64,000 nt of DNA, from positions 3,720,001 through 3,784,000 of the forward strand of contig JANJGN010000052.1 of assembly GCA_026770705.1 (NCBI GenBank). The letters are read 5' to 3'. Made by a program: the position numbers and the translations under genes. Shown piece after piece: positions 30,801-52,898 of the stretch (the first letter of the stretch is position 1; the number at the start of each line of letters is the position of its first letter). The notes beneath the pieces were generated by a model. It was not told the origin of the DNA. It made no database searches and saw only the letters and a program-made list of their open reading frames with translations. The stretch is from Isurus oxyrinchus (Eukaryota).

Positions 30801-30809
30801 CAGCACAGG

Positions 30810-30879
30810 AAGAGGTCATTCAGCCCAGGCAGAGCGTGTGGGCAGTTCCTCCCCAGGCGAGCAGTCGGACAGGTCCTGG
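30810..30879 (+). other. Siglec-like gene R: putative non-coding exon 1 (start approximate)
   Basis: Strong donor TGG|gtaagt at 30879/30880, conserved in three paralog copies, upstream of the leader-exon acceptor. Confidence 0.6.
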
Positions 30880-31329
30880 GTAAGTAATGGAACGATTGGA
30901 ATTCACTTCCACGACCAACACAGTCCTTTGTTGATGTTGTGACTTTATAAAGACAAATTCCAATGATTGATGCCTTTGAAAGATTTCTACTGATTATTGA
31001 GATCTGGGTGTGAGGCTCAAGTCTGTTGTACAGAACATCTTTCTAGCTCAAGGGATGAGGGAAGTGCAGGGACATGAGCTTTGGGACATCCTGAGGTGCT
31101 GAAATACGATATAGAAATGCAAGTCCTTCATTGATTTATTTTTTTAAAGCTTTTTAACTCTCTGCAGAGCACCTATCATCCCACAGAGAACCAAATTAGT
31201 CTGTGTAGACAATGTGTAAAAGCAGTTCTGATCTCTCGAGAGCTGTCGGACAAGAGGTGAGGTCTCATTAACTCCTTTCTCTTTCACAGTTTGAGAGTCA
31301 GAAGCTAAAGGAATATCTGGGAGTGGACA

Positions 31330-31369
31330 ATGATCGGGAAATCCTACTTCCTCCTGTCACTTCTCCAAG
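31330..31369 (+). CDS. Siglec-like gene R: leader exon (exon starts 31290)
   Basis: Acceptor ctttctctttcacag; MIGKSYFLLSLLQ G|gtaata, phase 1; joins in frame to every V exon (e.g. ...LLQ-VGLSQ). Confidence 0.88.
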
Positions 31370-32399
31370 GTAATATCATCGTCAACTTGGACAGACTTAT
31401 GGCTAATAGTCTTTGTAAAAGATCATTCTTATTGAGCTGTGATAGGGAACTGATTCAGCAGTGAGCCAGTGTACAAACTCACACCAAGTCCCATTCACCC
31501 ATCACCCCTGTGCTCACTGATATACACTGACTCCCTGTCTGACAGCAGAACTGCAGGACAGCAGAGACCTCAAAGGGTTTCAGGGCTGGAGGAGGTGACA
31601 GTGATAGGGAGTGGAGAGGGAGGATGGAGGGATAAGGAATCAATGAAGAGATTTTGAAAATTGAGTCATTGCTGGACTGGGAGCCAGTGTAGGTCAGCGA
31701 GTGACAGGGGAGCGATCGGCTGAATAGAGAAGCAGGGATAAAAACTGGGGGATGAAGTCTATCCTGATGCAAGCACTCCGATATCAATGCCCTGAAATGT
31801 TTCTCTCTTGCTGATTTTCATCAGAATTTCCCATGAAGACAACACAGAAGCTCTTAGATTAGACAGGCAGTTCAGCGTCACACTTCCTGTCCATTCTCAC
31901 CATGCTAGAAAATGCGATAAGATAGCAAGATAACTGATAGAGAGAAGGGAGGCAAAGCTGTCTGTATGTAAAACTGTCAAATATTCTGAGTTATCATGAT
32001 TGTTTCTGATCTGCTGCAGAGTTTATATTTCATTGAAACTTATCACTTTGCAGCTCAGAGAGAGACCATTGACTCACTGCCTGAAAGGGCGGTGGAAGCA
32101 GATTCAACAGGAACTTTCAGAAGGGGAACTGGATAAATACTTGAAGGGGAAATTTTGCAGGGTTGTGGAGGAAAGAGCAGAGGTGAGAGTGGGAATAATT
32201 GGACAGATCTTTCAACGGCCCAGCACAGGCTCGATGGGCCAAATGTCTTCCTTCTGTTCCGGATCATTCTACAATCCGATAAATTAAGTCCCTTTTCAAT
32301 AACTCTCCAGGCTCCTGCTGCAGGAATGGATCTTTCAGAAGGGCAGGGAGCAAGCGGTTTCTCATATCATGTTCATATTTATTGACAATTACATAAGTG

Positions 32400-35300
32400 C
32401 ATGGAACTGTTGAATATTTGAGTCTCTAAAGTGTGGATTTAACCTTCTGGTACACCCAGATCTTGTGCTGGTTACCTTGTCTGGAGGTGTCTTTAACTGC
32501 TCACAGTGATCTGTGGGATTGTCACCCTTGGATGTTGTTCCTGATTTCATGTGGGATCTTCTCCTCGATGGAATAGGAGCGGGAATGGATCTGATTTATC
32601 CTCAGTTCCGCCTCACCGCTGTGCCCTTGTGTGTTTGACTCCATAGGCCCTTGGTTCTGAACAAATCCTTGTCACCTCGGCTGGTGATCATGAACCTTCT
32701 GTGGGATCCTGGATGTGAACTTGTCCCAACTGTAAACTTGGCAACTGTGCACCTCCATTTTTATCATGAACATTCCTTATCTTCTCTTGTAGTTTTAAAA
32801 GTTGCCCTCTGGTTTCTGAGAGAGTAGAATGGGTAAGAATAGCGAAATTGGTCACTACTGGCCCACCAAACATGATCTCTGTCAGTGATGCAATAAGGTG
32901 AGGTGATGGTGTAGTGGTATTGTTGCTGGACGAGTAATTCAGAGACCCAGGGTAATGTCCTGAAAATATGAGTTCAAATCCTGTCATAATAGATGATGGA
33001 ATTTGAATTTAATAAAAAGATGAAATTCAAAGTCTAGTGATGACCACAAAACCATTGTTGGAAATCCCACCTGGTTCACCAGTGCCCTTTAGGGAACAAA
33101 ATTGCCTGGCCGACATGTGACTCCAGACTCCACGTCAATGTGGTTGACTCTTACATTAGGGATGGGTAATAAATCCTGGCCTGACCAGTGACTCCCACAT
33201 CCCATGAATGAATTTAACAAAGTTGCAGTTGTAGGTGTTGATCTCAGATGTAACATTGCAATGTGTGGATCTTGCTTGGTCTGTCTACATTTGAGAATTA
33301 GGGATTTCACTGGTGTGAATCATTCATTCAGCTAGGCCGTTAGATCTGGGGTAATGAGGAGAAGAAGTTGTGTGATTGATATTCCAGATTATATGTACTC
33401 ATGTCCCTAGGCTCACCAAATAAACTGAAAATAGTGCTTAGAATGTGTGCACCAGTAGTGCTCGGTGTGTTGTGTTATTTTTGAATAACGGGATATCTGG
33501 TAAAGCTGTCGACGATGACGATGAAGTCAGTGACATGGACATGAAAGGATTCAGATGTGAATTTGGACTAAGAATAGGCAGGAATTTCCTGTGGAATCAG
33601 TGGTTCTTTGTGTTGACTTGGCTCATCCTCTTGACAAGCCTCGAACTTCCCTACAACGACTTCAAGGTCATTGTTCATACCCGGCCAGTGACTGTATCTC
33701 TTGTGAGTCTCCCTGTCTGATCTGTGCCCATGTGTGAGGGATGAAGTTGTTGAAGAATATATCATCACAAAGGTTCCGGTATGATGCGATGCCTGCCATT
33801 AAAAATGACTCCCTGGGAGATGCCTCACTTATCCTGATGACATCAAGTTGAATCAGCCACCCTTTCAATGATATTTCCACAGTTCCTGTAGAATTTTTCA
33901 CTGTTCCCTCTTGTAGCTGCTGGCATTTCTGTTGTGCTAAATGTACTGGATCAATTGACAGACTTGCATTCTCCTGCAGGTGTAATGTTGCAGCTCCCTT
34001 GAAACTACAAATACTGTTGAAACTTTCTGCATATTTCAATGTTATGTCCATGAACTGAGTTGATGGGGTAGTTTCTGAGGTTGACCCATGTCAGGTCTGA
34101 CAGATTCCATGGATAGTCACTAGTGTGAGGTCACCGCATGCCGGTAGACTTGCAATTGCTCAGCCTTTAGTCTCCACAATGTAGAACATCTGTGACACCC
34201 AGGAGGATTGATTGTACTTGCACCCCAGGACTATGTATTCCGCACATGGAGTTGGTGAAGTGTTGTACACAGCAGTAGGTTTCCCCATGGACTTCCATGT
34301 CCTTGGATATATGTCTTTGAAAATTTGCTGGGGTGGGCTGGGGGAGGGGAATGTTGGCACTTGCCCTTGTGTCACTCTTGGCCAATAAAGGGGAGGTAGC
34401 CACTTTCTCAGGGCAGATAATTGGAATCTTGGCCAATAGTGCGGGTGATGTGACAGCATCTGTTCTCCGTGAGATCGATGGTGTAAAAGGTGTGAAATTG
34501 TTCAACAATTGCACAAAACGTTGAGCACAAATGTTGCACAAACTCTAAGCCGGGGTTTTCCGGCCCGGTCATGGTGGGACCTGCCTTGGGAGATTGGGAC
34601 AAATATAAATCCATTGGCTTTCGGCCGGACCGGACAATCCTGGCAGTGGGTGGGGCCAGAAAATCCTACCACTATGGGACATTTTCAGTTTATTTGATGT
34701 GCCCAGAGAGATCACTAAGGACAACAATCCACAATTTATTGACAAGCCACGACAGGATATGTGTGAGAGGTGGAATATCGATCACCGCACCTCGTCTCGC
34801 CGTGCACATCATCGCCATTTCCTGGTTTGTCAGTCACCACATGTCTATGTTCCTGATGGGATAGCGGATGGTCATTCTTATTGATTGAAGGTTCCCCGTT
34901 GTGTAGGGTCTGTTTGGATCAGCGCACGGCTCTTTGCAGCTGCATCAGCCTTTGCTCTAGTGCTCTGCCGCTGTCACTGGCCCTTTCTGCCACAAGCCTT
35001 GCAGGATTGGTGGAAAGCTGGGCATTTCCTTGGTGCCTGCAGAAGGCCACACCTTCCACACGTCTCACTAGGTTTGGATGTTCTAGTGAGTGTGTCAACA
35101 ATTGATGTTGTACTGAGGACCTGTAAGCTTCGTTGACCTGCGAGGATCACTTCGTATTTATGTCCATCCTTGAGTAGCTCTTCAATGCTATAGGTTTTGG
35201 TCTTATCTAGCAGATCTTTCTGGAAGGCTTCCATGGGAGTGGATGCGATCACCAACTCAACAACTGTGTCTGCAGGCTCTGTGTTTGAAATCACAGTGCG

Positions 35301-36350
35301 TACCCTTTTCTCTACATCGGCTGATGAAGTGGTCTATGGATTGTGTAGGCTGATGAAATGACATAAACTCTAGTTGATGAATATGGAGTTTCACCTGATT
35401 CTGAACCTGTCTTCCAATATCGTCCATATCTATTGGGGATCCTTTCGCTCTTCTGCTGTTAATCCTGACGTGTTCAGCCTGTGTAGACCTTCATTCCCAA
35501 TCACGAGGTGAATTTTTATGGCTTGTTCGTCTGGTTCAGTCACACCTGAATCAGGAAACCAGAGCTCTGTACGCTGTTTAAACATTCTGAATTCAGATAG
35601 TCGGTCAGCTACATCCCAGTTCAAACTGGGGAATTTCATGGACATTCTGACAATATTCCTTTGACCTTCCTTCTCCTACAGGACCTGGGATGAGTGTCGC
35701 TTTAGCCCCTTTCGTGCGCTTTTCCGAAGCTCCGCCCACGAAGATGGGTTGTGGCAGGAACACACCACGGAGTAATGGAGTCTTTGTTTTTTATTCAATT
35801 TGCTGTTCAGCAATCTCGAAGCCGCCCGTTATAATCACTAACTTCTCTGGGCTGATTTTTATAATGGTTTTTGTGTGTTTGACTCTCCCTCGCTCACTAT
35901 CGATCCAGCCCACACCCGGGTCCCTCGCCTTCCCTGACTGAGCTAACCCGCTGCTGGTCCTGGCGATACACACTGTCCCACTCACTGACCTACAGGCCGT
36001 GTGCTGTAATCTCACCACGAGGGATCCGTCTGCTCCCCAGCTCATTACTTGAGCTCTTTCCCGTCACTGTGTCTTCAAAGGTTTCCTGAGCAGTCAGTAC
36101 ACTGCGATTTCAACCCTCTCTGATGCTGTGTCTCTGTTGTGGTCTGACCAAAGCGTCGAGGGTCGTCTCATGTCATGTAGCTCGATCTCAGGCTGTTCAC
36201 CATGTCATACCTGTACTGAATCTTGCGGCCAGAATGTTTGGCCACCGCTGATCACCATGTTGTGTTTTTATAATGATATAAAGGCACCAGCCACTGATAC
36301 GGAATTGGGTAAATACATTGTGGGTTCAGTTATTTAGAATGGGGACATGA
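32400..36350 (-). mobile_element. Second decayed Gypsy LTR retrotransposon in the leader-V intron, with nested SINE at ~32895-33215
   Basis: gag N-terminus MKFPSLNWD...FRMFKQRTELWF, knuckle CGRCG...CPA...CKACGRKG, integrase remnants, PBS-like TGGTGATCAGCGG at ~36245-36257. Confidence 0.8.
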
Positions 36351-37770
36351 GAACAGATATACAAGGATAGAAAGCTGGGAGACACCTGCAGCCAAACTGT
36401 GTGAGCTGTGTTCTGCTCACAGGCCAAAGTGAAACTTGGACTGGATGGTGTTATCATCCCAGCTGATGTTACTACTGGGCAAGTCAGATCCCAGGGTGGA
36501 GCTCAGCTTGACAGGTCCTAACTTTTATTTTTTATTTAGGAATGTGGAGTGCTGCTACTGAACAGAGTCACAGGAATCATCTGATGACCTTCTAACAAAA
36601 GAATAAAACATTTATTAAACTAGGAAAGACAAACTATATTACATTACTCCTTCACCCAGACCTATACCTTTACAGATTCATAAGTAGAATACAAGTTACA
36701 ATAACTATCTTATACTCTCATGTTCACACTAAGTACACAGTTCATGCAAACCAATAGACGACCTGGTGTCAGGGACACCACATTCTGTAGCCAAGTGATA
36801 GACCCCAATTGGAACAAATGCTATGGGTTTCAGCTCAACTGACTCCAGACACTTGTTTCACCATGAGGCAACTGGTCTTACAAAACTGTATCTTTCACAT
36901 GAGAGTTTCCAATCTCTACTCGTCAAGTGCTCTCTTTGGAATCTTCTCTAACATGACACTTTCACTCAGAGACCTTCCACAAGGGTCCACTTCCACGATT
37001 TCAAACTCTCCTTCCCATGTTCCTGCCCCCTGGATCGCCACATGCATTCAGCCTTCCTTCTACGCGTTGTCTCTCCAATGCTCAGTCATGCCAATGGAAC
37101 ACCATGGCTTCACATGGTCATAGTAAGAAGACATCAACATTTAGCTGTCTCCTATGATCTTCTGGCTTCTAATCAGCCTTTTTTGCTTTAGGTCTGTGTC
37201 CTTTTGCTTTTTCTCTTTTAGCTTGGATCCCTCCTCTGCTCCTCAATCTTATCTCGACTTAACAGGACCTTTTTCAGATTCCTGATCTTCTTTGGAGTAG
37301 AAGGTCTTCTTGGGCTCTTTCTCCTGTTCCACTCGATGGTTTTGGCTTCTTCTTTACTTTGGGACTGACTATCTGTCCCGCTCCTATGCTGCTTCTCCTG
37401 GCAACTCCTTTCAACCAAACTGAAAGCACATTTCTGTTTTTCTCTGTCTCTATGGGTCCGTCCCTCTGGATCACTGTTGCTTAGCAATAGCACAGTTTCT
37501 TACACCTTGTGTTTGTTTTGACTTTCCTTCAAGAGACATCAAACCCCATTAGATTGCTAAACGAAAATGAAACCAAAACTGAAGTTTCCCCCTTTCTTAA
37601 CACACAAATACAGAAATCAAACTAAACTTGAACTTAAACATATACCTTATCCCTAACACACACAAATACACATAGAACTTACTTAAGCTATACCCAATTC
37701 CTAAAATCACATGACACACTTCCCCTCGAGTGATGTCATGCTGCTGTCCCTGAAAGGCATATTACAACAG

Positions 37771-38696
37771 TGTTATCACTTGGCAGGTGATGTGTGCCAG
37801 GCAGACCAAGTCCATGAGAGAAAGATGGTCACATGATCATAATGATTTTGCAATTTGTATTTATTATGAGATGTGTGCACTGAATTCAGAAGCAATAATT
37901 ACATAAAGACCTTTAGCGATTTGAAAATTAAATTAAAATACTTGCTCTCAAAATAAATGATTTGAAGCACATACATAACTCTACAATTACCACTATAATA
38001 ATTCTTAAAATTCTGAATTAAACTGACTCCCAGTTACACTCCCTTTAAGGCAACGGTCCAAAAATAGACTTTATATTTAAAACAAACCCAGCAAGTTAAC
38101 ACAATATAAAAGCAATACCCTGCACAGAGGAATTCCAAGTGGCTTTTCCCCAACTTCAGTTCTGTTGGATAGCAGGCTTGTGCACAAATGCTAGAGGTTT
38201 CATTAAGACTATATCACACACTCGTGTTAGATCTTACATGGCATTCTGACACATAGCCTTTCATTCTCCCTGATAGATATATATTTCTCTCTTTGTAACA
38301 TGAAAATTCTATTGTTCCATATGTTTTTGAAACTGTATATTCCACATAACAAACTCTTTCGTGGTGCCCATATTGCCAGGAGCCTTTGAGAAAAATAAAC
38401 ACATTCCTTAGTCTTGCTTATCTGGCTAGTTGTAAACAAGCTAAGATTCCTTTGAAATCCAACAACCCCTTCATTGATAGAAAAATGCAAATTCTCTTCA
38501 TACCTTCCATGCTAAGCAGCATCCATGTTTCCTCAATAGCATGTCAAGCACCTAGCTCCTTTTGATCATTTTAAACTTCCAATCTAATTAACTCCAAATG
38601 TACTTAAATCACATGCAGACCCATCATGCGTACCCCCATAAACCTACTTCACAATATACTATAAAATATTATGAAAATTATTATACTTACATCACA
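37771..38696. mobile_element. Probable solo LTR
   Basis: TGTTAT...ATCACA termini; imperfect 4-bp TSD ACAG/ATAG. Confidence 0.45.
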
Positions 38697-39099: not shown

Positions 39100-39474
39100 T
39101 TGGACTATCACAAGTATGGAAAGGTTACACTCCAGGAGAGGTGACAGCGCAGGAAGGTTCGTGTGTACAGATTCCATGTAATTACAGTTATCCATCATAT
39201 TTAGTAGCGAGATCACCAGTCGGAATCTGGTATATGAGAAGGAATTGGGAAAAATGGAATGAACGGTCTATAGCCTTTCACTCCAAGGATCATAATCGCG
39301 AGTTACCACAGTTCCACCATCGGACCCAGCTGTCTGGAGACCTGAAAGATGGCGACTGTTCCCTGATTATAAACAACATCAGACGGGAAGATGCAGGATA
39401 TTATTTATTCAGCCTAGAATTTGACAACAGGAATAGATACAACGACCGTCCTGAAACCCAGCTTCACGTTTCTG
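39100..39474 (+). CDS. Siglec-like gene R: V-set exon V1 (375 nt; essential Arg replaced by Ser)
   Basis: ccctag|TTGGA...TCTG|gtaagt; EVTAQEGSCVQIPC...GIW...GDCSLIINNIRREDAGYYLFSLE; Siglec-type Cys pattern. Confidence 0.92.
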
Positions 39475-39689
39475 GTAAGTGCTGTGTTATAATTACTCAA
39501 CAATTCACATCCAACACTCAATGGGAAATAATAGTGTTTGATTTGCTTGTTTTTTGGCCGTGTTAACCAGCGCCACTATTTTTAATGATTTGTCTATTTC
39601 TGCTCCCAGATCCATAAGCTTATTGTGTGTGATTGAATCCACATCATAGCTGTAACATAAACCGAGCTGAGGGGTGATGACACCTCCCC

Positions 39690-41280
39690 CCTGAGTGAAG
39701 TATCTCCTCCCCACTACACCTTCCACCCCTCACACTGTCCGTGTAAACCCCCGTCCCATCTCCAGCCTCTCTTTCCCCTCCAAAGTCCTGCAACCTGTTT
39801 CCATCTCCCGAATCTGTTCCCATCTTTCCCGGAACTCCATGTTTGAATCCCTCCAATCAGGTTCCCACCCCAGCCACTGTGCTGAAACAGCTCTTATCAA
39901 GGTCACAAATGGCATCCTGTGTGACTGTGACAAAGGTCAACTTTCCCTCCTCGTCCTTCTCGATCTGTCTGCAGCCTTTGACACGCTCGACCACACCATC
40001 CTCCTCCAACACCTCTCCACTGTGGTCCAGCTGGGTGGGACTGCTCTCCCCTGGCTCCATTCTTATCCATCTCATCGTAGCCAGAGAATCACTTGCAATG
40101 GCTTTGCAGCATCATCTGAACAGTGTTAGTTTTCACCTGTCCACTGAGGATCCCCAGCTCTACCTCACCACCACCTCTCTCGACTCCTCCACTGCTGCTA
40201 AATTATCAGGCTGCTTATCCGACATCCAGTACTGGATGGGCAGAAATTCCCTCCAATTAAATATTGGAAAGACTGAAGCCATTGTCTTCATTCCCCGCTC
40301 CAAACTCTGTTCCCTCGCTACCAACTCCATTCCTCTCCCTGGCAGCTCTCTGAGATTGAAGCCAATCTGTTCACAGCTTTGTTGTCCCATTTGATCCTGA
40401 GATGAGCTTCCGGCCTCCTATCTGCGCCCTCACTAACACCGTCTATTTCCACCTCCGTAACATCGCACGACGTCACCCTGTCTCAGCTCATCTGCTGCTG
40501 AAACCCTCATCCACGCCTTCATTACCTCCAGTCTCGACTGTTCCAACACACGCTCTACACTCCATAAACTTGAGGCCATCCAAAACTGCTGACCACGTCC
40601 TTACTCACACCAAGTCCCGTTCCCTTATCACCCGCTCTGCTCGATGACCGAGACTGGCTCCTGGTCAAGCAAAATGTCAACGTCCAAATTTTCATCTTTG
40701 TTTCCTCACTATCCCTGTAATCTCCTTGTCCTCCTCCAGTACCTACAACCATCCCATTCTCTGTAACCTCTTCAAGCCTCTACCGCTTCCCTATATCTGT
40801 AAATTCATCCTGCCCAACAAACCTACCAATCTCTGCAACCTCCTCCAGCCACAACAAATCTCCCTATTTCTGTAACTTCCTCCTGCCCCTAAAAGCTTCC
40901 CTATCTCTGTAGCCTGCTCCAGTCCCGACAACTTTCCCTGCCCCTGTAACCTGCCCCAGTCACTACAACCCTCCCGACCTCTGCAAACTCCTCCAGATTC
41001 TACACTCTCCCAATCTCTCTTAACTTTTCCAGCCCCTACAAACCTCCCTATCACTATAACTCCTCCAATCACTACAAACCTCGCTATCTCTGTAACCTCC
41101 TCCAGCCCCTACAACCCTCCCTATCTCTGTAACCTCCTCCAGACCCACCAACCTTCAGAGGTCTCTGCGCTCCTCCAATTCCAGCCTCTTGACCATCCCC
41201 CGATCTCAACACTCTAACATCGGTGGCCATGCCTTCAGCTGCCTGGGGACCGAGCTCTGTAATACCCTCCCTTAAGCCCT
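39690..41280 (+). mobile_element. L2-type LINE 3' fragment with degenerate 37-bp repeats in its tail
   Basis: RPISSL, HCAETAL, LLDLSAAFDTLDH, LQLNIGKTEAI; degenerate minisatellite at 40710-41160. Confidence 0.88.
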
Positions 41281-42019
41281 CTCCATCCCTCACACTCACT
41301 CTCTCTCTCTCACTAACCATTTCATCCCTCTTTTAATTTTCTCCATAACACCGACCTCTTCTGGTCAGCTGTCGCTAATATCTACACGTGTCTGGGTGAC
41401 ATACTTTGTTTTATGACGCTCCTGTGTAGCACCTTAGGGTGATTTGTCATGTTCAAGTTGTTGTGAAAATATAAGTTGTTGCCCTTTGACCCTCGACCCC
41501 AGATTGAGTCTTATTTTTGAGGGAATGTACAACCTGCTTAGATTTCTGACCAAAGTGTCATTTGATTATTTTTATTGAGCGAATGCCAAGCCCCGATACC
41601 GAGCGAGAGCCTCCTCATTTGCTGAGTTCAAGGTGATGAGTCAGCCCCTTAGTCCGTACAGGGGATTCTCCTCGGTAATGTACAGCCTTGTTTGTGTCTC
41701 TCCACAAGCGCATGAGGGATTTGTACAGAGGCTGCAGCGCTGGAGGGGGTCTGCACAGGGGTCCTGGCCTGTCCTGAGCTGGTTTTAGCAAGGACCACTC
41801 TGGCCTTGGCAGCTGAAAGCCAGCCATTGGACAGACAGGGCCTGTCACAAGGAGCCTGTTAGTCACTCCCCCCCGTGTCTCCTGTGCTCGGATCCAGACC
41901 ATGTTGGCTGGTGGATCTGGCTCAGGAAGGGTCCTCCCCATGGGACCCCCAGATGGAAGGTGGGTCGAGCGGGTCAGTCACTTGCATGTTTATTCTGCAG
42001 CTTTAATATTTTAAGAAGG

Positions 42020-42815
42020 TAAGAATGTAGGAACATAAGAAATAGGGACAGGAGCAGGCCATTCGGCCCCTCCAGCCTGCCCTCGCTGATCTGGTTGTGG
42101 CCTTAACTCCATTTTCCTGCCTGTCCCCCAAACCCTTGACTCCCTTGTCGATCAAAAACCTGCCTCACTCAGCCTTGAGTCTATTCAATGGCCCAGCCTC
42201 CACTGCTCTCTGGGGAAGAGAATTCCACAGGCTAGCGCCCCTCTGAGAGAGGAAATTCCTCCTCATCTCAGTCTTAAATGGGAGAGTCCTCATTCCGAAA
42301 CTGTGCTCCCTGGTTCTAGATTCCCCCACGAGGGGGAAACATCCTCCCAGCATCCACCCTGTCAAGCCCCCTCGGAATTGGATATGTTTCAATAAGGTCA
42401 CCCCTCATTCTTCTAAACTCCAATGGATACAGGCCCAACCTGCTCAACATTTCCTCACAGGACAAACCCTTTAATCCCAGGAATCAGCCCAGTGAAGCTT
42501 CTCTGAACTGCCTGTACACAATGATCCTGTTACAATCTCACTAACGCCCTGTGCAGCTGTTGCAAGACTTCCCTCCTTTTATACTCCATCCCTTTGCAAT
42601 AAAGGCCAACATTCCACTTGCCTTCCTCATTCCGTGGTGTTCCTGAATGCTGACTTTCTGTGATTCATGTACAAGGACACCCAGATCCCTCTGTACTGCA
42701 TTCTGCAGCCTGTCTCCATTTAAATAATATCCTGTTTTTCTATTCTTCCTGCCAAAATAATTTGTTGCCATTCTCCTCAGTATTGACCATCCCCCCAATT
42801 CAGCCTCATCTGTAA
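42020..42815 (-). mobile_element. CR1 LINE fragment, repeated in each tandem unit
   Basis: QRDLGVLVHES.K, KASGMLAFI, SRTREHS, EMRRNF.SQR..LWNSLP. Confidence 0.88.
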
Positions 42816-42876
42816 ATTTTGAGTCTAGTGGATCCACAAACCATCCAGAGATAAATATTGAGATTTCTCTCCCCAG

Positions 42877-43245
42877 TTGGACTGTCACAAGAGTGGAAAG
42901 GTGACACTCCACGAGAGGTGACAGCTCAGGAAGGTTCGTGTGTACAGATTCCATGTCATTACAGTTATCCATCGTGTCTGGAAAACCAACCGCGAGGTGG
43001 ACTCTGGTTTAATAATGAGAAACAGATTCCCTGGGCTCCCATTGCCTTTCACTCCAAGGATCACAGTCACGAGTTACCACGGTTCCGCCATCGGACCCGG
43101 CTGTCTGGAGACCTGAAAGATGGCGACTGTTCCCTGATTATAAACAACATCAGACGGGAAGATGCAGGACCTTATTTTTTCAGAATAGAATTTGACAATG
43201 GTCCGAGCCATAACTATTACCCTGTAACCCAGCTTCACGTTTCTG
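42877..43245 (+). CDS. Siglec-like gene R: V-set exon V2 (369 nt)
   Basis: ccccag|TTGGA...TCTG|gtaagt; DAGPYFFRIE with Arg codon at 43182-43184. Confidence 0.93.
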
Positions 43246-45181
43246 GTAAGTGCTGTGTTATAATTACTCAACAATTCACATTCAACACTCAATGGGAATT
43301 AACACAAACTGTGACGTTTACATATTAACACAAAACACAGTTTATTATAACACACTGTCTGATTCTCAATAACCTGGTGATAGCTTCCAGTTCAGTCCTA
43401 AAGCAATGTCTAATACTCACTTTAATATCAATGATTAAATGTGTTGACTGTGTCTATCAATGTTATCAGTTTATCCACTCCCATCAATCTCTCAAATCCT
43501 GTCTTGAAGTCTGACATATCGACAGAAGAAAGATTTACATTTCTACAGCGCCTTTCACCACCCTAGACTTCCCACCCTAAACCTCTCCCTCTCCCTCTTC
43601 CTCTCCCTCTCTCTCTCTCTCTCTCTGTCTCTTTCTCTCTGTCTCTCCATAACACCGACCTCTTCTGGTCAGCTGTCGCTAATATCTACACGTGTCTGGG
43701 TGACATACTTTGTTTTATGACGCTCCTGTGTAGCACCTTGAGGTGATTTGTCATGTTAAAGTTGTTGTGAAAATATAAGTTGTTGCCCTTTGACTCTCGA
43801 CCCCAGATCGAGTCTTATTTTTGAGGGAATGTACAACCTCCTTAGATTTCTGACCAAAATGTCATTTGATTATTTTTATTGAGCGAATGCCAAGCCCCGA
43901 TACCGAGCGAGAGCCTCCTCATTTGCCGAGTTTAGGGTGATGAGTCAGCCCCTTAGTCCGTAGAGGGGATTCTCCTCGGTAATGAGCAGCCTTGTTTGTG
44001 TCTCTCCACAAGCGCATGAGGGGTTTGTACAGAGGCTGCAGCGCTGGAGGGGGTCTGCACAGGGGTCCTGGCCTGTCCTGAGCCGGTTTTAGCAAGGACA
44101 ACTCTGGCCTTGGCAGCTGAAAGCCAGCCATTGGACAGACGGGGCCTGTCACAAGGAGCCTGTTAGTCACTCCCCCCCCGTGTCTCCTGTGCTCGGATCC
44201 AGACCATGTTGGCTGGTGGATCTGGCTCAGGAAGGGTCCTCCCCATGGGACCCCCAGATGGAAGGTGGGTCGAGCGGGTCAGTCACTTGCATGTTTATTC
44301 TGCAGCTTTAATATTTTAAGAAGGTAAGAATGTAGGAACATAAGAAATAGGGACAGGAGCAGGCCATTCGGCCCCTCCAGCCTGCTCTCACTGATCTGGT
44401 TGTGGCCTTAACTCCATTTTCCTGCCTGTCCCCCAAACCCTTGACTCTCTTGTCGATCAAAAACCTGCCTCACTCAGCCTTGAGTCTATTCAATGGCCCA
44501 GCCTCCACTGCTCTCTGGGGAAGAGAATTCCACAGGCTAGCGCCCCTCTGAGAGAGGAAATTCCTCCTCATCTCAGTCTTAAATGGGAGAGCCCTCATTC
44601 TGAAACTGTGCTCCCTGGTTCTAGATTCCCCCACGAGGGGGAAACATCCTCCCAGCATCCACCCTGTCAAGCCCCCTCGGAATTGGATATGTTTCAATAA
44701 GGTCACCCCTCATTCTTCTAAACTCCAATGGATACAGGCCCAACCTGCTCAACATTTCCTCACAGGACAAACCCTTTAATCCCAGGAATCAGCCCAGTGA
44801 AGCTTCTCTGAACTGCCTGTACACAATGATCCTGTTACAATCTCACTAACGCCCTGTGCAGCTGTTGCAAGACTTCCCTCCTTTTATACTCCATCCCTTT
44901 GCAATAAAGGCCAACATTCCACTTGCCTTCCTCATTCCGTGGTGTTCCTGAATGCTGACTTTCTGTGATTCATGTACAAGGACACCCAGATCCCTCTGTA
45001 CTGCATTCTGCAGCCTGTCTCCATTTAAATAATATCCTGTTTTTCTATTCTTCCTGCCAAAATAATTTGTTGCCATTCTCCTCAGTATTGACCATCCCCC
45101 CAATTCAGCCTCATCTGTAAATTTTGAGTCTAGTGGATCCACAAACCATCCAGAGATAAATATTGAGATTTCTCTCCCCAG

Positions 45182-45550
45182 TTGGACTGTCACAAGAGTG
45201 GAAAGGTGACACTCCACGAGAGGTGACAGCTCAGGAAGGTTCGTGTGTACAGATTCCATGTCATTACAGTTATCCATCGTGTCTGGAAAACCAACCGCGA
45301 GGTGGACTCTGGTTTAATAATGAGAAACAGATTCCCTGGGCTCCCATTGCCTTTCACTCCAAGGATCACAGTCACGAGTTACCACGGTTCCGCCATCGGA
45401 CCCGGCTGTCTGGAGACCTGAAAGATGGCGACTGTTCCCTGATTATAAACAACATCAGACGGGAAGATGCAGGACCTTATTTTTTCAGAATAGAATTTGA
45501 CAATGGTCCGAGCCATAACTATTACCCTGTAACCCAGCTTCACGTTTCTG
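45182..45550 (+). CDS. Siglec-like gene R: V-set exon V3 (369 nt, protein identical to V2)
   Basis: Same splice sites and translation as V2. Confidence 0.92.
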
Positions 45551-47488
45551 GTAAGTGCTGTGTTATAATTACTCAACAATTCACATTCAACACTCAATGG
45601 GAATTAACACAAACTGTGACGTTTACATATTAACACAAAACACAGTTTATTATAACACTCTGTCTGATTCTCAATAACCTGGTGATAGCTTCCAGTTCAG
45701 TCCTAAAGCAATGTCTAATACTCACTTTAATATCAATGATTAAATGTGTTGACTGTGTCTATCAATGTTATCAGTTTATCCACTCCCATCAATCTCTCAA
45801 ATCCTGTCTTGAAGTCTGACATATCGACAGAAGAAAGATTTACATTTCTACAGCGCCTTTCACCACCCTAGACTTCCCACCCTAAACCTCTCCCTCTCCC
45901 TCTTCCTCTCCCTCTCTCTCTCTCTCTCTCTGTCTCTTTCTCTCTGTCTCTCCATAACACCGACCTCTTCTGGCCAGCTGTCGCTAATATCTCCACATGT
46001 GTCTGGGTGACATACTTTGTTTTATGACGCTCCTGTGTAGCACCTTGAGGTGATTTGTCATGTTAAAGTTGTTGTGAAAATATAAGTTGTTGCCCTTTGA
46101 CTCTCGACCCCAGATCGAGTCTTATTTTTGAGGGAATGTACAACCTCCTTAGATTTCTGACCAAAATGTCATTTGATTATTTTTATTGAGCGAATGCCAA
46201 GCCCCGATACCGAGCGAGAGCCTCCTCATTTGCCGAGTTTAGGGTGATGAGTCAGCACCTTAGTCTGTAGAGGGGATTCTCCTCGGTAATGAGCAGCCTT
46301 GTTTGTGTCTCTCCACAAGCGCATGAGGGGTTTGTACAGAGGCTGCAGCGCTGGAGGGGGTCTGCACAGGGGTCCTGGCCTGTCCTGAGCCGGTTTTAGC
46401 AAGGACAACTCTGGCCTTGGCAGCTGAAAGCCAGCCATTGGACAGATGGGGCCTGTCACAAGGAGCCTGTTAGTCACTCCCCCCCCGTGTCTCCTGTGCT
46501 CGGATCCAGACCATGTTGGCTGGTGGATCTGGCTCAGGAAGGGTCCTCCCCATGGGACCCCCAGATGGAAGGTGGGTCGAGCGGGTCAGTCACTTGCATG
46601 TTTTTTCTGCAGCTTTAATATTTTAAGAAGGTAAGAATGTAGGAACATAAGAAATAGGGACAGGAGCAGGCCATTCGGCCCCTCCAGCCTGCTCTCACTG
46701 ATCTGGTTGTGGCCTTAACTCCATTTTCCTGCCTGTCCCCCAAACCCTTGACTCTCTTGTCGATCAAAAACCTGCCTCACTCAGCCTTGAGTCTATTCAA
46801 TGGCCCAGCCTCCACTGCTCTCTGGGGAAGAGAATTCCACAGGCTAGCGCCCCTCTGAGAGAGGAAATTCCTCCTCATCTCAGTCTTAAATGGGAGAGCC
46901 CTCATTCTGAAACTGTGCTCCCTGGTTCTAGATTCCCCCACGAGGGGGAAACATCCTCCCAGCATCCACCCTGTCAAGCCCCCTCGGAATTGGATATGTT
47001 TCAATAAGGTCACCCCTCATTCTTCTAAACTCCAATGGATACAGGCCCAACCTGCTCAACATTTCCTCACAGGACAAACCCTTTAATCCCAGGAATCAGC
47101 CCAGTGAAGCTTCTCTGAACTGCCTGTACACAATGATCCTGTTACAATCTCACTAACGCCCTGTGTAGCTGTTGCAAGACTTCCCTCCTTTTATACTCCA
47201 TCCCTTTGCAATAAAGGCCAACATTCCACTTGCCTTCCTCATTCCGTGTTGTTCCTGAATGCTGACTTTCTGTGATTCATGTACCAGGACACCCAGATCC
47301 CTCTGTACTGCATACTGCAGCCTGTCACCATTTAAATTATATCCTGTTTTTCTATTCTTCCTGACAATATAATTTATTGCCATTCTCCTCAGTATTGACC
47401 ATCCCCCCAATTCAGCCTCATCTGTAAATATCGGGTTCAGTGGATCCACAAACCATTCAGAGTTAAATATTGAGATTTCTCTCCCCAG

Positions 47489-47854
47489 CTGAACCCTCAC
47501 AAGAGTGGAAAGGTGACACTCCACGAGAGGTGACAGTGCAGGAAGGTTCCTGTGTACAGATTCCATGTCATTATAGTTATCCATCATGTCTGGAAAACCA
47601 ACCGCGACGTGGAGTCTGGCTTAATAATGAGGAATGGAGAACATCGTCTATAGCCTTTCACTCCAAGGATCACAGTCACGAGTTACCACGGTTCCACCAT
47701 CGGACCCGGCTGTCTGGAGACCTGAAAGATGGCGACTGTTCCCTGATTATAAACAACATCACATGGGAAGATGCAGGACCTTATTTTTTCAGAATAGAAT
47801 TTGACAATGGTCCGAGCCATAACTATTACCCTGTAACCCAGGTTCACGTTTCTG
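47489..47854 (+). CDS. Siglec-like gene R: V-set exon V4 (366 nt)
   Basis: ccccag|CTGAACCC...TCTG|gtaagt; AEPSQEW...RRGVWLNNEEWRTSSIAF...NITWEDAGPYFFRIEFD. Confidence 0.93.
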
Positions 47855-49790
47855 GTAAGTGCTGTGTTATAATTACTCAACAATTCACATTCAACACTCA
47901 ATGGGAATTAACACAAACTGTGACGTTTACATATTAACACAAAACACAGTTTATTATAACACACTGTCTGATTCTCAATAACCTGGTGATAGCTTCCAGT
48001 TCAGTCCTAAAGCAATGTCTAATACTCACTTTAATATCAATGATTAAATGTGTTGACTGTGTCTATCAATGTTATCAGTTTATCCACTCCCATCAATCTC
48101 TCAAATCCTGTCTTGAAGTCTGACATATCGACAGAAGAAAGATTTACATTTCTACAGCGCCTTTCACCACCCTAGACTTCCCACCCTAAACCTCTCCCTC
48201 TCCCTCTTCCTCTCCCTCTCTCTCTCTCTCTCTCTGTCTCTTTCTCTCTGTCTCTCCATAACACCGACCTCTTCTGGTCAGCTGTCGCTAATATCTACAC
48301 GTGTCTGGGTGACATACTTTGTTTTATGACGCTCCTGTGTAGCACCTTGGAGTGATTTGTCATGTTAAAGTTGTTGTGAAAATATAAGTTGTTGCCCTTT
48401 GACTCTCGACCCCAGATCGAGTCTTATTTTTGAGGGAATGTACAACCTCCTTAGATTTCTGACCAAAATGTCATTTGATTATTTTTATTGAGCGAATGCC
48501 AAGCCCCGATACCGAGCGAGAGCCTCCTCATTTGCCGAGTTTAGGGTGATGAGTCAGCACCTTAGTCTGTAGAGGGGATTCTCCTCGGTAATGTGCAGCC
48601 TTGTTTGTGTCTCTCCACAAGCGCATGAGGGGTTTGTACAGAGGCTGCAGCGCTGGAGGGGGTCTGCACAGGGGTCCTGGCCTGTCCTGAGCTGGTTTTA
48701 GCAAGGACCACTCTGGCCTTGGCAGCTGAAAGCCAGCCATTGGACAGACGGGGCCTGTCACAAGGAGCCTGTTAGTCACTCCCCCCCCGTGTCTCCTGTG
48801 CTCGGATCCAGACCATGTTGGCTGGTGGATCTGGCTCAGGAAGGGTCCTCCCCATGGGACCCCCAGATGGAAGGTGGGTCGAGCGGGTCAGTCACTTGCA
48901 TGTTTTTTCTGCAGCTTTAATATTTTAAGAAGGTAAGAATGTAGGAACATAAGAAATAGGGACAGGAGCAGGCCATTCGGCCCCTCCAGCCTGCTCTCAC
49001 TGATCTGGTTGTGGCCTTAACTCCATTTTCCTGCCTGTCCCCCAAACCCTTGACTCTCTTGTCGATCAAAAACCTGCCTCACTCAGCCTTGTGTCTATTC
49101 AATGGCCCAGCCTCCACTGCTCTCTGGGGAAGAGAATTCCACAGGCTAGCGCCCCTCTGAGAGAGGAAATTCCTCCTCATCTCAGTCTTAAATGGGAGAG
49201 CCCTCATTCTGAAACTGTGCTCCCTGGTTCTAGATTCCCCCACGAGGGGGAAACATCCTCCCAGCATCCACCCTGTCAAGCCCCCTCGGAATCGGATATG
49301 TTTCAATAAGGTCACCCCTCATTCTTCTAAACTCCAATGGATACAGGCCCAACCTGCTCAACATTTCCTCACAGGACAAACCCTTTAATCCCAGGAATCA
49401 GCCCAGTGAAGCTTCTCTGAACTGCCTGTACACAATGATCCTGTTACAATCTCACTAACGCCCTGTGTAGCTGTTGCAAGACTTCCCTCCTTTTATACTC
49501 CATCCCTTTGCAATAAAGGCCAACATTCCACTTGCCTTCCTCATTCCGTGTTGTTCCTGAATGCTGACTTTCTGTGATTCATGTACCAGGACACCCAGAT
49601 CCCTCTGTACTGCATACTGCAGCCTGTCACCATTTAAATTATATCCTGTTTTTCTATTCTTCCTGACAATATAATTTATTGCCATTCTCCTCAGTATTGA
49701 CCATCCCCCCAATTCAGCCTCATCTGTAAATATCGGGTTCAGTGGATCCACAAACCATTCAGAGTTAAATATTGAGATTTCTCTCCCCAG

Positions 49791-50156
49791 CTGAACCCTC
49801 ACAAGAGTGGAAAGGTGACACTCCACGAGAGGTGACAGTGCAGGAAGGTTCCTGTGTACAGATTCCATGTCATTATAGTTATCCATCATGTCTGGAAAAC
49901 CAACCGCGACGTGGAGTCTGGCTTAATAATGAGGAATGGAGAACATCATCTATAGCCTTTCACTCCAAGGATCACAGTCACGAGTTACCACGGTTCCACC
50001 ATCGGACCCGGCTGTCTGGAGACCTGAAAGATGGTGACTGTTCCCTGATTATAAACAACATCAGACGGGAAGATGCAGGACCTTATTTTTTCAGAATAGA
50101 ATTTGAAAATGGTCCGAGCCATAACTATTACCCTGTAACCCAGGTTCACGTTTCTG
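49791..50156 (+). CDS. Siglec-like gene R: V-set exon V5 (366 nt)
   Basis: As V4 but with NIRRED and EFEN; canonical splice sites. Confidence 0.93.
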
Positions 50157-50893
50157 GTAAGTGCTGTGTTATAATTACTCAACAATTCACATTCAACACT
50201 CAATGGGAAACAACACAAACTGTGACGTTTACATATTAACACAAAACACAGCTTATTATAACACACTGTCTGATTCTCAATAACCTGGTGATAGCTTCCA
50301 GTTCAGTCCTAAAGCAACCTCTAATACTCACTTTAATATCAATGATTAAATGTATTGACTGTGTCCATCAATGTTATCAGGTTATCCACTCCCATCGATC
50401 TCTCTAATCCTGTCTCGAAGTCTGACTTAGCGACAGAAGAAAGATTCACATTTCTGTAGCACTTTTCACCACCTCAGCATGGACCAAATCACTTCACAGC
50501 CAATGAGCTGATTCCTGAATTGTAGTTACTATTGTAATGTGGGAAACACAGCAACCAATTTGCACACAGCAAGCTCCCACAAATTGCAAAGTAAAAAATG
50601 GCCCAGATCGCTGAGGGACTGATGGGTTAGTGCACTCCAAACTCTGGTCTGCTCCACCACCCTCACCCACTATTATCAGTTCAAGTGTCTCGGAGTGAAC
50701 GTGTATTAAGCTGAGAGACAGAAACACCAAAGTCTCAAAGCAGGAAATTCTCTCCTAATCATTGTAACCTCTCAGATCTGATATCATCCTTGTAAAAGTG
50801 CTTTTTCTTGTGGGATTGTGATTTCTATTTGAACTGATGCTTCACGTTATATTTCTCTAAAAGGATCCATTCTCCGTCTGTTAAATTTCACAG

Positions 50894-51181
50894 ATAAACC
50901 CACGATATTCCCTGCTGAAATTATTGCAGGAAAGCCTGTGGATGTAAGCTGCACCTTCAACACAACGTGCAATGGAACAGCAGCACCTGTCTTAACCTGG
51001 GACACTCCCACTGACGTACGTGGATCAGTCTCAAACACTGTAACTCAGCATGGTGTCACTCTGACCTATACTTCTGTTCTGACCCTGATCCCATCACTCA
51101 AACACCACAGACACACTCTCAGCTGCAGAGTGAGATATCCATCTGTTGCATCGGAGCGGACCCTCGTACTAACTGTGCAAG
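50894..51181 (+). CDS. Siglec-like gene R: C2-set Ig exon
   Basis: (D)KPTIFPAEIIAGKPVDVSCTFNTTCNGTAAPVLTW...LSCRVRYP...LTVQ G|gtaagt. The upstream AG seen in gene L is AA here (50883-50884); an in-phase CAG lies at 50891-50893. Confidence 0.88.
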
Positions 51182-52770
51182 GTAAGTACAGACACCTTTC
51201 ATTCTACATCAGCACTCCCTCAGCGCTGACCCTCTGACAGTGCAGCCTGTTCTCAGTGTCCACATTCTCAGACCTCTCAAAGTGCTTCACAGTCGATAGA
51301 AGTTAACTGATCTTTATTTGATTGTTGCTGAATGAAGGGACAAGCTGTCTAAACTTTACATCTCACACACATTATTTTCCATGGCAACACCTCCTCCAAT
51401 CAGAGACCACTTGCTGATTAACCAGCACTCTCTTCCCTTTAAATATAAATTGTTGTTCACTTTCTGTTGGTAAACCTGCAATCTGTCTTGTTGAGTCCGG
51501 TCCTGACATCTGAATATCACAATGAACAGAACAAGTTCCAACAATGAGCTGTGGTTGGTGATTCCTCACGTTACATCCAGGGACACTGGAGACTATCAGT
51601 GTGCTCAGAGAATGAACATGGAGCAGTGGAGGGGTTCATAACCATCACTGTGGAACGTTAGTTAAGACAAACTTCAACATCTCTCTCAGATTGAAACACT
51701 ACAAAAACACACATAAATATCCAGCCTTAAATAGACACCTGCAGACACACAATCCCACATCTATGAGCACACACAAAGACACACTCACAAACAAACACAC
51801 TAGCACATACTCCCCTGTGGATTACCTGACCTCCCTCAGTGCTGCACCGGAGAGTTGACCTGGATTCTGGGATTTGTGTTCCCTTTCATATTTATGGAAG
51901 AATATGGAAATTGCAAAGTCTATTACAGACACTCAGATGCACAGAGATACTCACAGATACTCTCTGCCTCTCCAACTCTCTATCCTCCTTTAAGAAGCTT
52001 CCTGAAATCTAACTCTTTGACCAGTCACCTGTCCCAATTCCTCCTTACGTGATTTTGTGTGAAATTTTGTTTGAGTATCTGAGAGTAAGAGGGAAGTGGA
52101 GAGGTTTAGGAAGGGAATTCCTGTTGCTGAAAAGCTTACATCATGTTCTCAGCTTTCCAGTGCCCATTTTTCACATGACGTCCATGTTCATAATGGGGAT
52201 TGCCTATGTAAACGTCACGCTGTAGTTACTCTCTCCCACCAGTGGTAGCACGGTAACACTTAACCCTTGCATCTCCAAGCTTTACAAGCAATTTCACTTC
52301 CTAATTTGCTACTATTCACCTCAACCATTCCCTGTGGGAGCGAGTTCCACATTCTCCCCTCTCTCTGGGTAAAGATTGGAACTGTTTATTAAGCGGGGTG
52401 TGTAAGTCCGTGGGGGAGTCCATCTCGATCCTGCCCGATTCGCACACGCGTCCGAGATGGATTTCCACCCTGCACTAAACGTTTCCAGAATTTTCTACAG
52501 CACAATCCTGTACACAGCGATGGAGAGAAACATTGGACAGAGAGTCCAACAGCACAATGATCCATTCTCACCAATGTTCCACGCTAAGGGGAAAGTTCCG
52601 ATTGTCCACTCTTAGAGTGTTTACAGTGAAAACATTCATTCCACATTGAATCCCAGTGGATGGGTCAATATTACAGCAAATGTTGCAGTGATATGAAGCT
52701 TGATTGTTCAGCCAGAGTGAGAGATTGAAAGCGGAGAGTCAGTGATGATTTCTTTCTGTGTGTTCTCTAG

Positions 52771-52898
52771 ACAGTGGAGGAGAGATTCTGCACGTGATCC
52801 TGATCCTGGGAATACGAGCTGTGATATTCCTTGTGGCTGTGGTTATCACTATCGCTGGAGTCTGTGTCTGGGAGAGACAAACAGTGAAAGGAAGTTGA
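52771..52898 (+). CDS. Siglec-like gene R: TM plus short-tail terminal exon with intramembrane Arg
   Basis: Acceptor tttctttctgtgtgttctctag; phase 1 (D)SGGEILHVILILGIRAVIFLVAVVITIAGVCVWERQTVKGS*; Arg codon 52815-52817. Confidence 0.9.

What the first reader, a model, noticed from the sequence alone, without database searches (positions are those of the whole stretch)
30810..52898. Siglec-like receptor gene with a cassette of five interchangeable V-set exons between one leader and one C2-TM unit
Seen: one leader (31330-31369), five open V exons with canonical AG/GT and phase 1/1, one C2 exon and one TM exon; I found no leader or C2 inside the tandem units. Each V exon starts with the tail of the signal peptide (VGLSQ or AEPSQ), so each is built as a first-domain exon. 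Known: characterised Siglecs carry one N-terminal V-set domain (primate Siglec-XII has two). Inference: either V exons are chosen by alternative or mutually exclusive splicing onto a constant region (273-aa product with V5), giving a small Dscam-style repertoire, or they are strung together into a multivalent 5V receptor (766 aa). Either would be unusual for a Siglec.
Basis: partly seen in the sequence, partly recalled or inferred. Interest (0 to 1): 0.92.

Follow-up and report, generated by a model that had tools for sequence, protein, structure and literature searches.

The report
Shark Siglec gene with five V-exons
A shark immune-receptor gene of the sialic-acid-lectin (Siglec) family really carries five in-frame copies of its sugar-binding exon, but they look built to be strung in series, a layout already in gene models of other sharks, and this copy may be decaying.

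Summary
Observation confirmed. There is one leader (31330-31369) and five open V-set exons, all AG/GT, phase 1-1 and a multiple of three bases long. One C2 exon and one TM exon follow. No leader or C2 lies inside the 2.3-kb units.

V1 is an "outer" V and has lost the essential Arg. V2-V5 are four young copies of an "inner" V type. That type has an extra Cys (YPSC), and V4/V5 start AEPSQ. In 146 annotated Siglec-like proteins this type almost never follows a signal peptide.

Gene models of other sharks and rays already show 2-5 V domains in series. Catshark isoforms use different V subsets. RNA contigs from this shark hold leader-to-V, V-to-V, V-to-C2 and C2-to-TM junctions.

Serial inclusion is therefore favoured over Dscam-style choice. 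Every tested mechanism for exclusive choice fails.

The RNA carries letters of another copy, not of this gene. This gene has lost its usual C2 acceptor, has four replacements at conserved C2 residues, and has a slightly early stop. It may be unexpressed or decaying.

The scan found similar multi-V Siglec genes elsewhere in this genome. I found no paper describing them.

The parts
30747..30879 (+). Candidate non-coding first exon and promoter-proximal stretch (donor GG|GTAAGT at 30879/30880).
   Evidence: It is 95% alike to the matching stretch of the inverted paralogue (24690-24469). The sequence was read.
31290..31369 (+). Leader exon. ATG at 31330 encodes MIGKSYFLLSLLQ plus the first base of the next codon (phase 1).
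   Evidence: It is the only leader homologue in the gene. The same signal peptide appears in annotated shark Siglec-like proteins.
39100..39474 (+). V1, the outer-type V-set exon. It is 375 nt, phase 1-1. The essential Arg is replaced by Ser (YYLFSLEF), and there is no extra Cys (YPSY).
   Evidence: In the tree it sits with lamniform first-position V domains (98/86). It is 73% alike to the outer V of C. carcharias XP_041037160.1.
39695..40394 (+). LINE reverse-transcriptase fragment inside the V1-V2 intron.
   Evidence: The ORFs carry RT motifs. It was not searched further.
40730..41154 (.). 37-bp satellite, 11.6 copies, just upstream of the array.
   Evidence: The same satellite lies at 2071-3785 and 63262-64000.
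41340..50473 (+). Tandem array of 3.96 units of 2304 bp. Each unit holds one inner-type V exon and about 1.9 kb of intron with an antisense LINE fragment.
   Evidence: U3 and U4 differ mainly in a 600-nt patch around the 5' part of the exon.
42877..43245 (+). V2, an inner-type V-set exon. It starts VGLSQ, has the extra Cys (YPSC), and keeps the Arg (YFFRIEF).
45182..45550 (+). V3, identical to V2 over all 369 nt.
47489..47854 (+). V4, an inner-type V-set exon. It starts AEPSQ, has YPSC, keeps the Arg, and reads NITWED.
   Evidence: RNA contigs read a V-donor end joined to this type of exon start (loose end at 47488).
49791..50156 (+). V5, like V4 (5 nt differ). It is the last V before C2.
   Evidence: The best solved relatives are Siglec-5, CD33 and Siglec-8 (E 3e-14), and YFFRIE aligns with their YFFRVE/YFFRME. 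It is 89% alike to the inner V of XP_041037160.1.
50894..51181 (+). C2-set exon, 288 nt, phase 1-1. The family's usual acceptor lies 9 nt upstream (AG at 50883-50884 in relatives) and reads AA here.
   Evidence: RNA joints go to 50885, which is the acceptor of the other copies.
51390..51656 (+). Relic of a second C2/I-set exon. It is broken by stops, an internal deletion and a 1-nt deletion at 51603/51604.
   Evidence: Intact copies elsewhere are highly represented in RNA and are spliced to the TM exon (+T at 51603, joint 51656>52771).
52771..52898 (+). TM and tail exon, reading DSGGEILHVILILGIRAVIFLVAVVITIAGVCVWERQTVKGS*. An Arg sits inside the membrane span. The TGA at 52896-52898 cuts the last four residues (RQTV) found in relatives.
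   Evidence: The C2-to-TM joint 51181>52771 was seen in three runs. The contig runs on unspliced past 52898, so this is the last coding exon.
14538..24690 (-). Inverted paralogue P with a single V exon. Its leader (about 19095) has a 1-nt deletion. Its V (18352-17979) has two frameshifts. C2 is at about 17119-16823 and TM at about 14677-14538. It is a pseudogene and shows the one-V-exon layout.

Best explanation
This is a lamniform-shark member of a CD33-related-like, activating-type Siglec family. The ancestral plan was leader, outer V, inner V, C2, (second C2), then a TM exon with a buried Arg and a very short tail.

In this gene the 2.3-kb unit holding the inner V exon was amplified to four copies. 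This happened by recent unequal crossing-over or tandem duplication.

All V exons are phase 1-1, a multiple of three bases long, and share the same strong U2-type splice sites. Ordinary splicing should therefore string them in series. The product would have up to five V-set domains (766 aa): a first head without the sialic-acid Arg and four heads with it.

Some V exons may be skipped, giving shorter strings.

Shown here: the anatomy, the domain types, the duplication history, and the family-level junctions. Inferred: that this particular copy is transcribed and that all five exons are kept in its transcript.
For: - **Exon symmetry and splice sites.** All five V exons share these features.
- **Domain lineage.** V1 groups with first-position V domains. 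V2-V5 group with internal V domains of other sharks.
- **Inner-type markers.** The AEPSQ start is found in 0 of 96 V domains behind a signal peptide and in 20 of 57 internal ones. The extra Cys is found in 1 of 96 and 33 of 57.
- **Closest relative.** C. carcharias XP_041037160.1 has leader, outer V, AEPSQ inner V, C2 and the same TM with Arg.
- **Same plan elsewhere.** S. torazame XP_072326181.1 has one outer plus four inner V and the same TM.
- **More multi-V models.** They occur in Scyliorhinus, Mustelus, Cetorhinus, Hypanus and Mobula.
- **RNA contigs of this species** show four junction types: leader to a GLSQ-type V; a V donor to an EPSQ-type V; a V donor to C2; and C2 to TM.
- **Single-V paralogue.** The inverted paralogue has one V exon only, so the array is derived.
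- **Real divergence between units.** Units differ by 1.2-1.3% outside the exon. Their variant letters recur in contigs from another sample.
Against: **No RNA junction or letter is specific to this gene.**
- The expressed contigs carry the other state at 50884, 50936, 51020, 51109, 51148 and 52896. Their leader differs by 1 nt.
- They therefore come from a paralogue or another allele.

**This gene shows signs of relaxed constraint.**
- The usual C2 acceptor is lost.
- All four derived changes in C2 are replacements at residues conserved across sharks.
- The stop comes four residues early.

**The support has limits.**
- V1 was outside the laid stretch.
- Gene models in other species are automatic predictions.
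- Contigs cannot show how many V exons one molecule holds.
Confidence: 0.55

Rival explanations
1. The gene is an unexpressed or decaying copy in a birth-and-death family. The V exons are open only because V2-V5 are very young duplicates.
For: - The usual C2 acceptor reads AA instead of AG.
- All four derived C2 changes are nonsynonymous at residues conserved in all relatives: R to P, P to R, G to R, and S to A.
- A TGA comes four codons early.
- The second C2 exon is dead.
- The neighbouring inverted paralogue is a clear pseudogene.
- RNA contigs show only the other copy's letters. They show no joint to this gene's own fallback acceptor at 50894.
Against: - All eight coding exons are open.
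- An in-frame AG 9 nt downstream can replace the lost acceptor.
- The early stop removes only four tail residues.
- The second C2 exon is also skipped in relatives: the C2-to-TM joint is seen in RNA, and XP_041037160.1 lacks it.
- V1 stayed open over the time in which the paralogue's V exon gained two frameshifts.
- Logan contigs drop minor variants, so absence from them is weak evidence.
Confidence: 0.25
2. One V exon per transcript is chosen (mutually exclusive or Dscam-style), giving a small repertoire of single-V receptors on one constant region.
For: - There is one leader and one constant region for five V exons.
- V2/3 and V4/5 differ mainly in the CC' loop, which sets glycan preference in Siglecs.
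- Catshark isoforms X1-X3 of one gene use different V exons.
- Great white isoform X4 joins the leader directly to the inner V.
Against: - None of the known ways to enforce exclusivity applies. The exon lengths are multiples of three, the introns are about 1.9 kb, and all donors are GTAAGT. The best docking-like complementarity is 13 nt.
- V-to-V junctions exist in RNA.
- The catshark isoforms still hold 3-4 V domains in series.
- AEPSQ-type V domains never follow a signal peptide in 96 annotated cases.
- No leader-to-EPSQ junction was among the listed loose ends.
Confidence: 0.1
3. The number of units is an assembly artefact, and the real gene has fewer inner V exons.
For: - The units are 96-100% alike, and V2 equals V3 exactly. 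Such arrays are hard to assemble.
- I could not lay genomic reads, because the single reads call went to RNA.
Against: - Likeness falls with distance between units (98.3, 96.7 and 96.0%), as in real arrays.
- Two exon types are present.
- Unit-specific letters of U2, U3 and U4 recur in contigs of another sample.
- There are no N runs.
- Other first readers and follow-up agents in this scan report similar V-exon arrays at other loci of this genome. I did not check those notes.
Confidence: 0.08

Closest known systems
Primate Siglec-12 / human Siglec-XII
   Same: It is a Siglec with more than one V-set domain in series at the N-terminus. In humans the essential Arg of one V domain is mutated (PMC6288428), as in V1 here.
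   Different: It has two V domains only and an inhibitory tail. Here there are five V exons, an Arg in the membrane span and an 8-residue tail. The duplication is independent.
Activating Siglecs (Siglec-14, -15, -16) that pair with DAP12
   Same: They have a positively charged residue in the TM domain and a short tail (PMC6288428). The V domain is CD33-related-like.
   Different: Those have one V domain. Adaptor pairing in sharks is untested.
Annotated elasmobranch multi-V Siglec-like models: C. carcharias XP_041037160.1, S. torazame XP_072326181.1, S. canicula XP_038670868-874, Cetorhinus XP_078389734/739, Hypanus XP_059815055
   Same: They share the leader, the outer and inner V types, the AEPSQ/YPSC inner V, the DFTDKP C2 and the TM with Arg. 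They hold 2-5 V domains in series.
   Different: They are automatic models with no paper that I could find. This gene's four inner exons are much younger (0-8% apart) and sit in a regular 2.3-kb array. Its C2 acceptor and tail are altered.
Dscam1-type mutually exclusive exon clusters
   Same: Both are a tandem array of alternative Ig-domain exons between constant exons.
   Different: No docking/selector pairing, steric limit, U12 clash or frame trap is present. Relatives include several array exons at once.
Polymeric Ig receptor
   Same: It is a string of V-like domains in one chain. NCBI even named the S. torazame 5-V model 'pIgR-like'.
   Different: The V domains here are Siglec-type by Pfam Ig_CD22, Cys pattern and Arg. 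pIgR matches cover only a short stretch.

Membership tests
Siglec (I-type lectin) family | V-set domain of the Siglec type | tested here: met
   All five exons match Pfam V-set and Ig_CD22 (PF24518) above the curated cut-offs. The top 18 solved relatives are all Siglecs.
Siglec (I-type lectin) family | Essential Arg on strand F that binds the sialic-acid carboxylate | tested here: met
   V2-V5 read YFFRIEF, which aligns with YFFRVE/YFFRME of Siglec-5 and CD33. V1 has Ser there, so V1 alone fails this test.
Siglec (I-type lectin) family | Cys pattern: C-x4-C at strand B plus a strand E Cys, with a third Cys in the next C2 domain for an inter-domain bond | tested here: met
   All V exons carry CVQIPC ... 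DCSL, and C2 has SCTFNTTC ... LSC. The pairing itself is inferred from knowledge of solved Siglecs and was not modelled here.
Siglec (I-type lectin) family | Binding of sialylated glycans | not testable with these tools
   This needs a glycan array or cell binding with a recombinant ectodomain.
Activating (adaptor-coupled) Siglec subclass | Basic residue inside the TM helix and a short tail without ITIM | tested here: met
   The TM reads ILHVILILGIRAVIFLVAVVITIAGVCVW, followed by ERQTVKGS and a stop. The same TM appears in great white and catshark models. The adaptor partner is untested.
Mutually exclusive exon cluster (Dscam type) | Array exons never joined to each other | tested here: not met
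   A V donor is joined to an EPSQ-type V start in contigs of two runs. Annotated relatives hold 2-5 V domains in series. This evidence is at family level, not for this gene itself.
Mutually exclusive exon cluster (Dscam type) | A mechanism that enforces exclusivity (short intron, U2/U12 clash, frame trap, docking/selector RNA pairing) | tested here: not met
   The exons are 366-375 nt, all multiples of three. The introns are about 1.9 kb and all donors are GTAAGT. The best complementarity between constant introns and the unit intron is 13 nt, E 0.04.

The most novel reading that the evidence does not exclude
Sharks may build Siglec receptors with a variable number and choice of lectin heads from tandem V-exon arrays.

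The inner V type would have evolved to be chained. Its extra BC-loop Cys sits where the C2 domain carries the Cys for the inter-domain disulfide. Each inner V could therefore be bonded to the V in front of it.

Exon skipping within the array (as in catshark isoforms X1-X3) would then give a small combinatorial set of multivalent activating receptors. Their heads would differ in the CC' specificity loop.
Probability: 0.2. Interest if true: 0.7.

Novelty: new variant of a known kind. Interest (0 to 1): 0.45.

Why it matters
Siglecs are taught as receptors with one sugar-binding head; primate Siglec-12, with two, is the stated exception. In the held library I found no paper on Siglecs of sharks or rays.

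Sharks and rays appear to have a large, fast-turning family of CD33-like receptors with two to five or more heads in series. Both activating and inhibitory endings occur. This locus shows how such genes grow: a 2.3-kb unit holding one symmetrical exon is amplified.

If the strings are made as protein, they offer a natural test of how valency and head order tune glycan recognition. They also give an independent origin of multi-V lectin receptors.

For this particular gene the value is lower. The layout is already in automatic annotation of other species, the scan has met it at other loci of this genome, and this copy may not be expressed.

Tried and rejected
- **The look-up of encoding contigs was closed.** I could not fetch genomic or transcript contigs of the great white, basking shark or catshark relatives to see their exon arrays.
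- **Spliced model not joined, as instructed.** All searches were exon by exon, by reference. Only exon lengths were summed, and single exons were translated.
- **The one reads call went to RNA-like runs.** No genomic reads were laid, so copy number is unchecked.
- **V1 and the leader lay outside the 5.6-kb stretch.**
- **Docking/selector search.** Only 9-13 nt matches turned up, which I rejected as chance.
- **dN/dS between V exons.** Values of 0.36-1.04 do not separate selection from relaxation.
- **Paper searches.** These gave nothing on shark Siglecs beyond a passing mention in the whale shark genome paper.
- **Structure prediction and complex prediction were not used.** The outputs give no coordinates to measure Cys-Cys distances, and I make no binding claim.
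- **An early idea was weakened.** I had thought the extra Cys never follows a signal peptide. Great white isoform X4 (P0270) skips the outer V, so the count is 1 of 96.
Full report
**What is there**

The window is an inverted segmental duplication. The gene in question (G, + strand, 30.7-53 kb) faces a paralogue (P, - strand, 24.7-14.5 kb).

G has these parts:
- a leader exon, 31290-31369, with ATG at 31330;
- five V-set exons: V1 39100-39474, V2 42877-43245, V3 45182-45550, V4 47489-47854, V5 49791-50156;
- a C2 exon, 50894-51181;
- a last exon, 52771-52898, that encodes the membrane span and an 8-residue tail.

Every V exon is a multiple of three bases long (375, 369, 369, 366, 366) and phase 1-1. 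Each is open, with a pyrimidine-rich AG acceptor and a CTG|GTAAGT donor. All five match Pfam V-set and the Siglec first-domain model Ig_CD22. The C2 exon matches C2-set_2.

The best solved relatives of V5 are Siglec-5, CD33, Siglec-8 and Siglec-7 (E down to 3e-14). YFFRIE aligns to their YFFRVE/YFFRME motif. From general knowledge of Siglecs, that motif holds the essential Arg.

No second leader and no second C2 lie inside the array.

It is broken by stops, an internal deletion and a 1-nt deletion.

**How the array arose**

V2-V5 sit in 3.96 tandem units of 2304 bp (41340-50473). Neighbouring units are 98.3% alike. Units two apart are 96.7% alike and units three apart 96.0%.
- V2 and V3 are identical over the exon.
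- V4 and V5 differ by 5 nt.
- V2/3 differ from V4/5 by 30 nt. These differences lie in a 600-nt patch covering the exon's 5' part and the 240 nt before it. The rest of the unit differs by about 1%.

V1 is older, about 83% alike in DNA and 68% in protein. It lies in a block inserted into what is the short leader-V intron in P.

P has one V exon only. It is a pseudogene: its leader has a 1-nt deletion and its V exon has two frameshifts. The five-exon state is therefore derived, by exon-unit duplication.

**Outer and inner V types**

I counted V domains in 146 annotated Siglec-like proteins, mostly from sharks and rays.

| Feature | V domain directly behind a signal peptide | Internal V domain |
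|---|---|---|
| AEPSQ-like start | 0 of 96 | 20 of 57 |
| Extra Cys (YPSC) | 1 of 96 | 33 of 57 |

An earlier tally gave Fisher p 5e-18, but the rows are related, so this is not a true probability. The single exception is a great white isoform that skips the outer V.

In a maximum-likelihood tree of 64 V domains, G's V1 sits with lamniform first-position domains (support 98/86). V2, V4 and V5 sit inside a clade made almost wholly of internal domains (90/92).

The closest annotated protein is C. carcharias XP_041037160.1. It has the same leader, an outer V (73% alike to V1), an AEPSQ inner V (89% alike to V5), a C2 starting DFTDKP, and the same TM with Arg, ending KGSRQTV. G is that plan with the inner V exon amplified fourfold.

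S. torazame XP_072326181.1 has the same one-outer-plus-four-inner plan and the same TM.

The VGLSQ and AEPSQ starts are inherited exon ends that annotated proteins carry inside the chain.

**Series or choice**

The known ways to enforce one-of-many exon choice are a very short intron, a U2/U12 clash, a frame trap, and docking/selector RNA pairing. None is present.
- The exons are multiples of three bases.
- The introns are about 1.9 kb.
- All donors are GTAAGT.
- The best complementarity between constant introns and the unit intron is 13 nt.

RNA-like contigs of the same species (runs X3 and X4; exon peaks over low intron signal) and of a sister species (X17, X18) were laid on 47400-53000. They show:
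- a leader end joined to a GLSQ-type V start;
- a V-donor end (TTCACGTTTCTG) joined to the EPSQ-type V start;
- a V donor joined to C2;
- C2 joined to the TM exon (51181>52771, GT..AG);
- in X17, the intact second C2 exon joined to the TM exon.

The TM contig runs on unspliced past the stop, so this is the last coding exon.

V-to-V splicing therefore exists in this family in this animal. The EPSQ-type exon was seen behind a V donor. Among the listed ends it was not seen behind the leader.

Annotated relatives hold 2-5 V domains in series. Looser choice also has precedent. S. canicula isoforms X1 (4 V), X2 and X3 (3 V each) of one gene have consecutive accessions. X2 and X3 are identical outside the first V domain and use different first V exons. 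X1 uses another subset.

My reading is serial inclusion with possible skipping, not strict exclusive choice.

**Is this copy alive?**

The RNA contigs do not carry G's own letters. Five positions and one insertion separate them from G.
- At 50884, 50936, 51020, 51109, 51148 and 52896 they show the state of P, of the sister species and of all annotated relatives.
- They also carry an extra T at 51603.
- They are not P itself: they share 4 of P's 6 differences in C2. Their leader differs from G by one synonymous base.

They come from another paralogue or allele.

G's derived states are as follows:
- The usual C2 acceptor is lost (AG to AA). An in-frame AG 9 nt downstream remains.
- Four replacements fall at C2 residues conserved across sharks (R to P, P to R, G to R, S to A), with no synonymous change.
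- A TGA removes the last four tail residues.

No joint to G's fallback acceptor at 50894 was listed. This fits relaxed constraint, though every coding exon is still open and contigs drop minor variants. I give the decaying or unexpressed reading 0.25.

**Is the array real?**

Likeness falls with distance between units, and two exon types are present. Of the 16 "other letters" listed for contigs laid on unit 5, 12 match the letters of units 2-4 at the same positions. Nearly all of those 12 come from the X3/X4 sample; the four that do not match come mostly from the sister species.

**Comparison and novelty**

In the literature I could search:
- Siglec-12 is the Siglec with two V-set domains;
- human Siglec-XII lacks the essential Arg;
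- activating Siglecs carry a basic TM residue for DAP12 (PMC6288428).

I found no paper on shark or ray Siglecs.

Automatic annotation already records multi-V Siglec-like proteins in at least eight elasmobranch species. Other notes and follow-ups of this scan report arrays of two to seven V exons at other loci of this genome.

This locus is thus one more case of an undescribed but database-visible variant of the Siglec plan. It adds three things: a clear duplication history, a split into outer and inner V types, and family-level junction evidence.

**Limits**

Searches were exon by exon.

Noticed in passing
window 1-64000 (arms about 2-24.7 kb and 30.7-64 kb): The whole window is a head-to-head inverted segmental duplication. 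The arms are 72-98% alike depending on the stretch, and the TM-exon region is 98% alike, which may reflect gene conversion. One arm holds a single-V pseudogene and the other holds the five-V gene.
   Followed up: partly
window 30215-30528, 53642-53995, 22990-24470, 13120-13510: Arrays of a 33-bp satellite (GACAGTGCAGCACTCCCTCAG...) flank both paralogues on both sides. The copy at 53642-53995 is 89% regular.
   Followed up: no
P0166 / P0160 / P0011 (S. canicula XP_038670868-874): Three NCBI isoforms of one catshark gene are identical except in which V exons they contain. At least six different V exons are used, three or four per isoform. This is annotated evidence for combinatorial V-exon use that deserves a check against RNA reads.
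   Followed up: partly
window 51514-51700: This bin has the highest contig depth of the laid stretch in X3 and X4. It lies over the dead second C2 exon, and the contigs carry an extra T that restores the frame. Intact copies of this exon elsewhere in the genome therefore appear to be well represented in RNA. They are spliced to several different downstream exons (loose ends ATGCACCACAGAAT and AGAGACTCCAG).
   Followed up: no
window 42541-42800 and the same place in each unit (- strand): An antisense LINE ORF2 C-terminal fragment (…LNGDRLQNAVQRDLGVLVHESQKV…) lies 80-330 nt upstream of each inner V exon. It belongs to the duplicated unit.
   Followed up: no
P0183, P0258, P0262 (Leptobrachium leishanense): A frog also has predicted Siglec-like proteins with three or four V-set domains in series. 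Multi-V strings may therefore have arisen more than once outside mammals.
   Followed up: no
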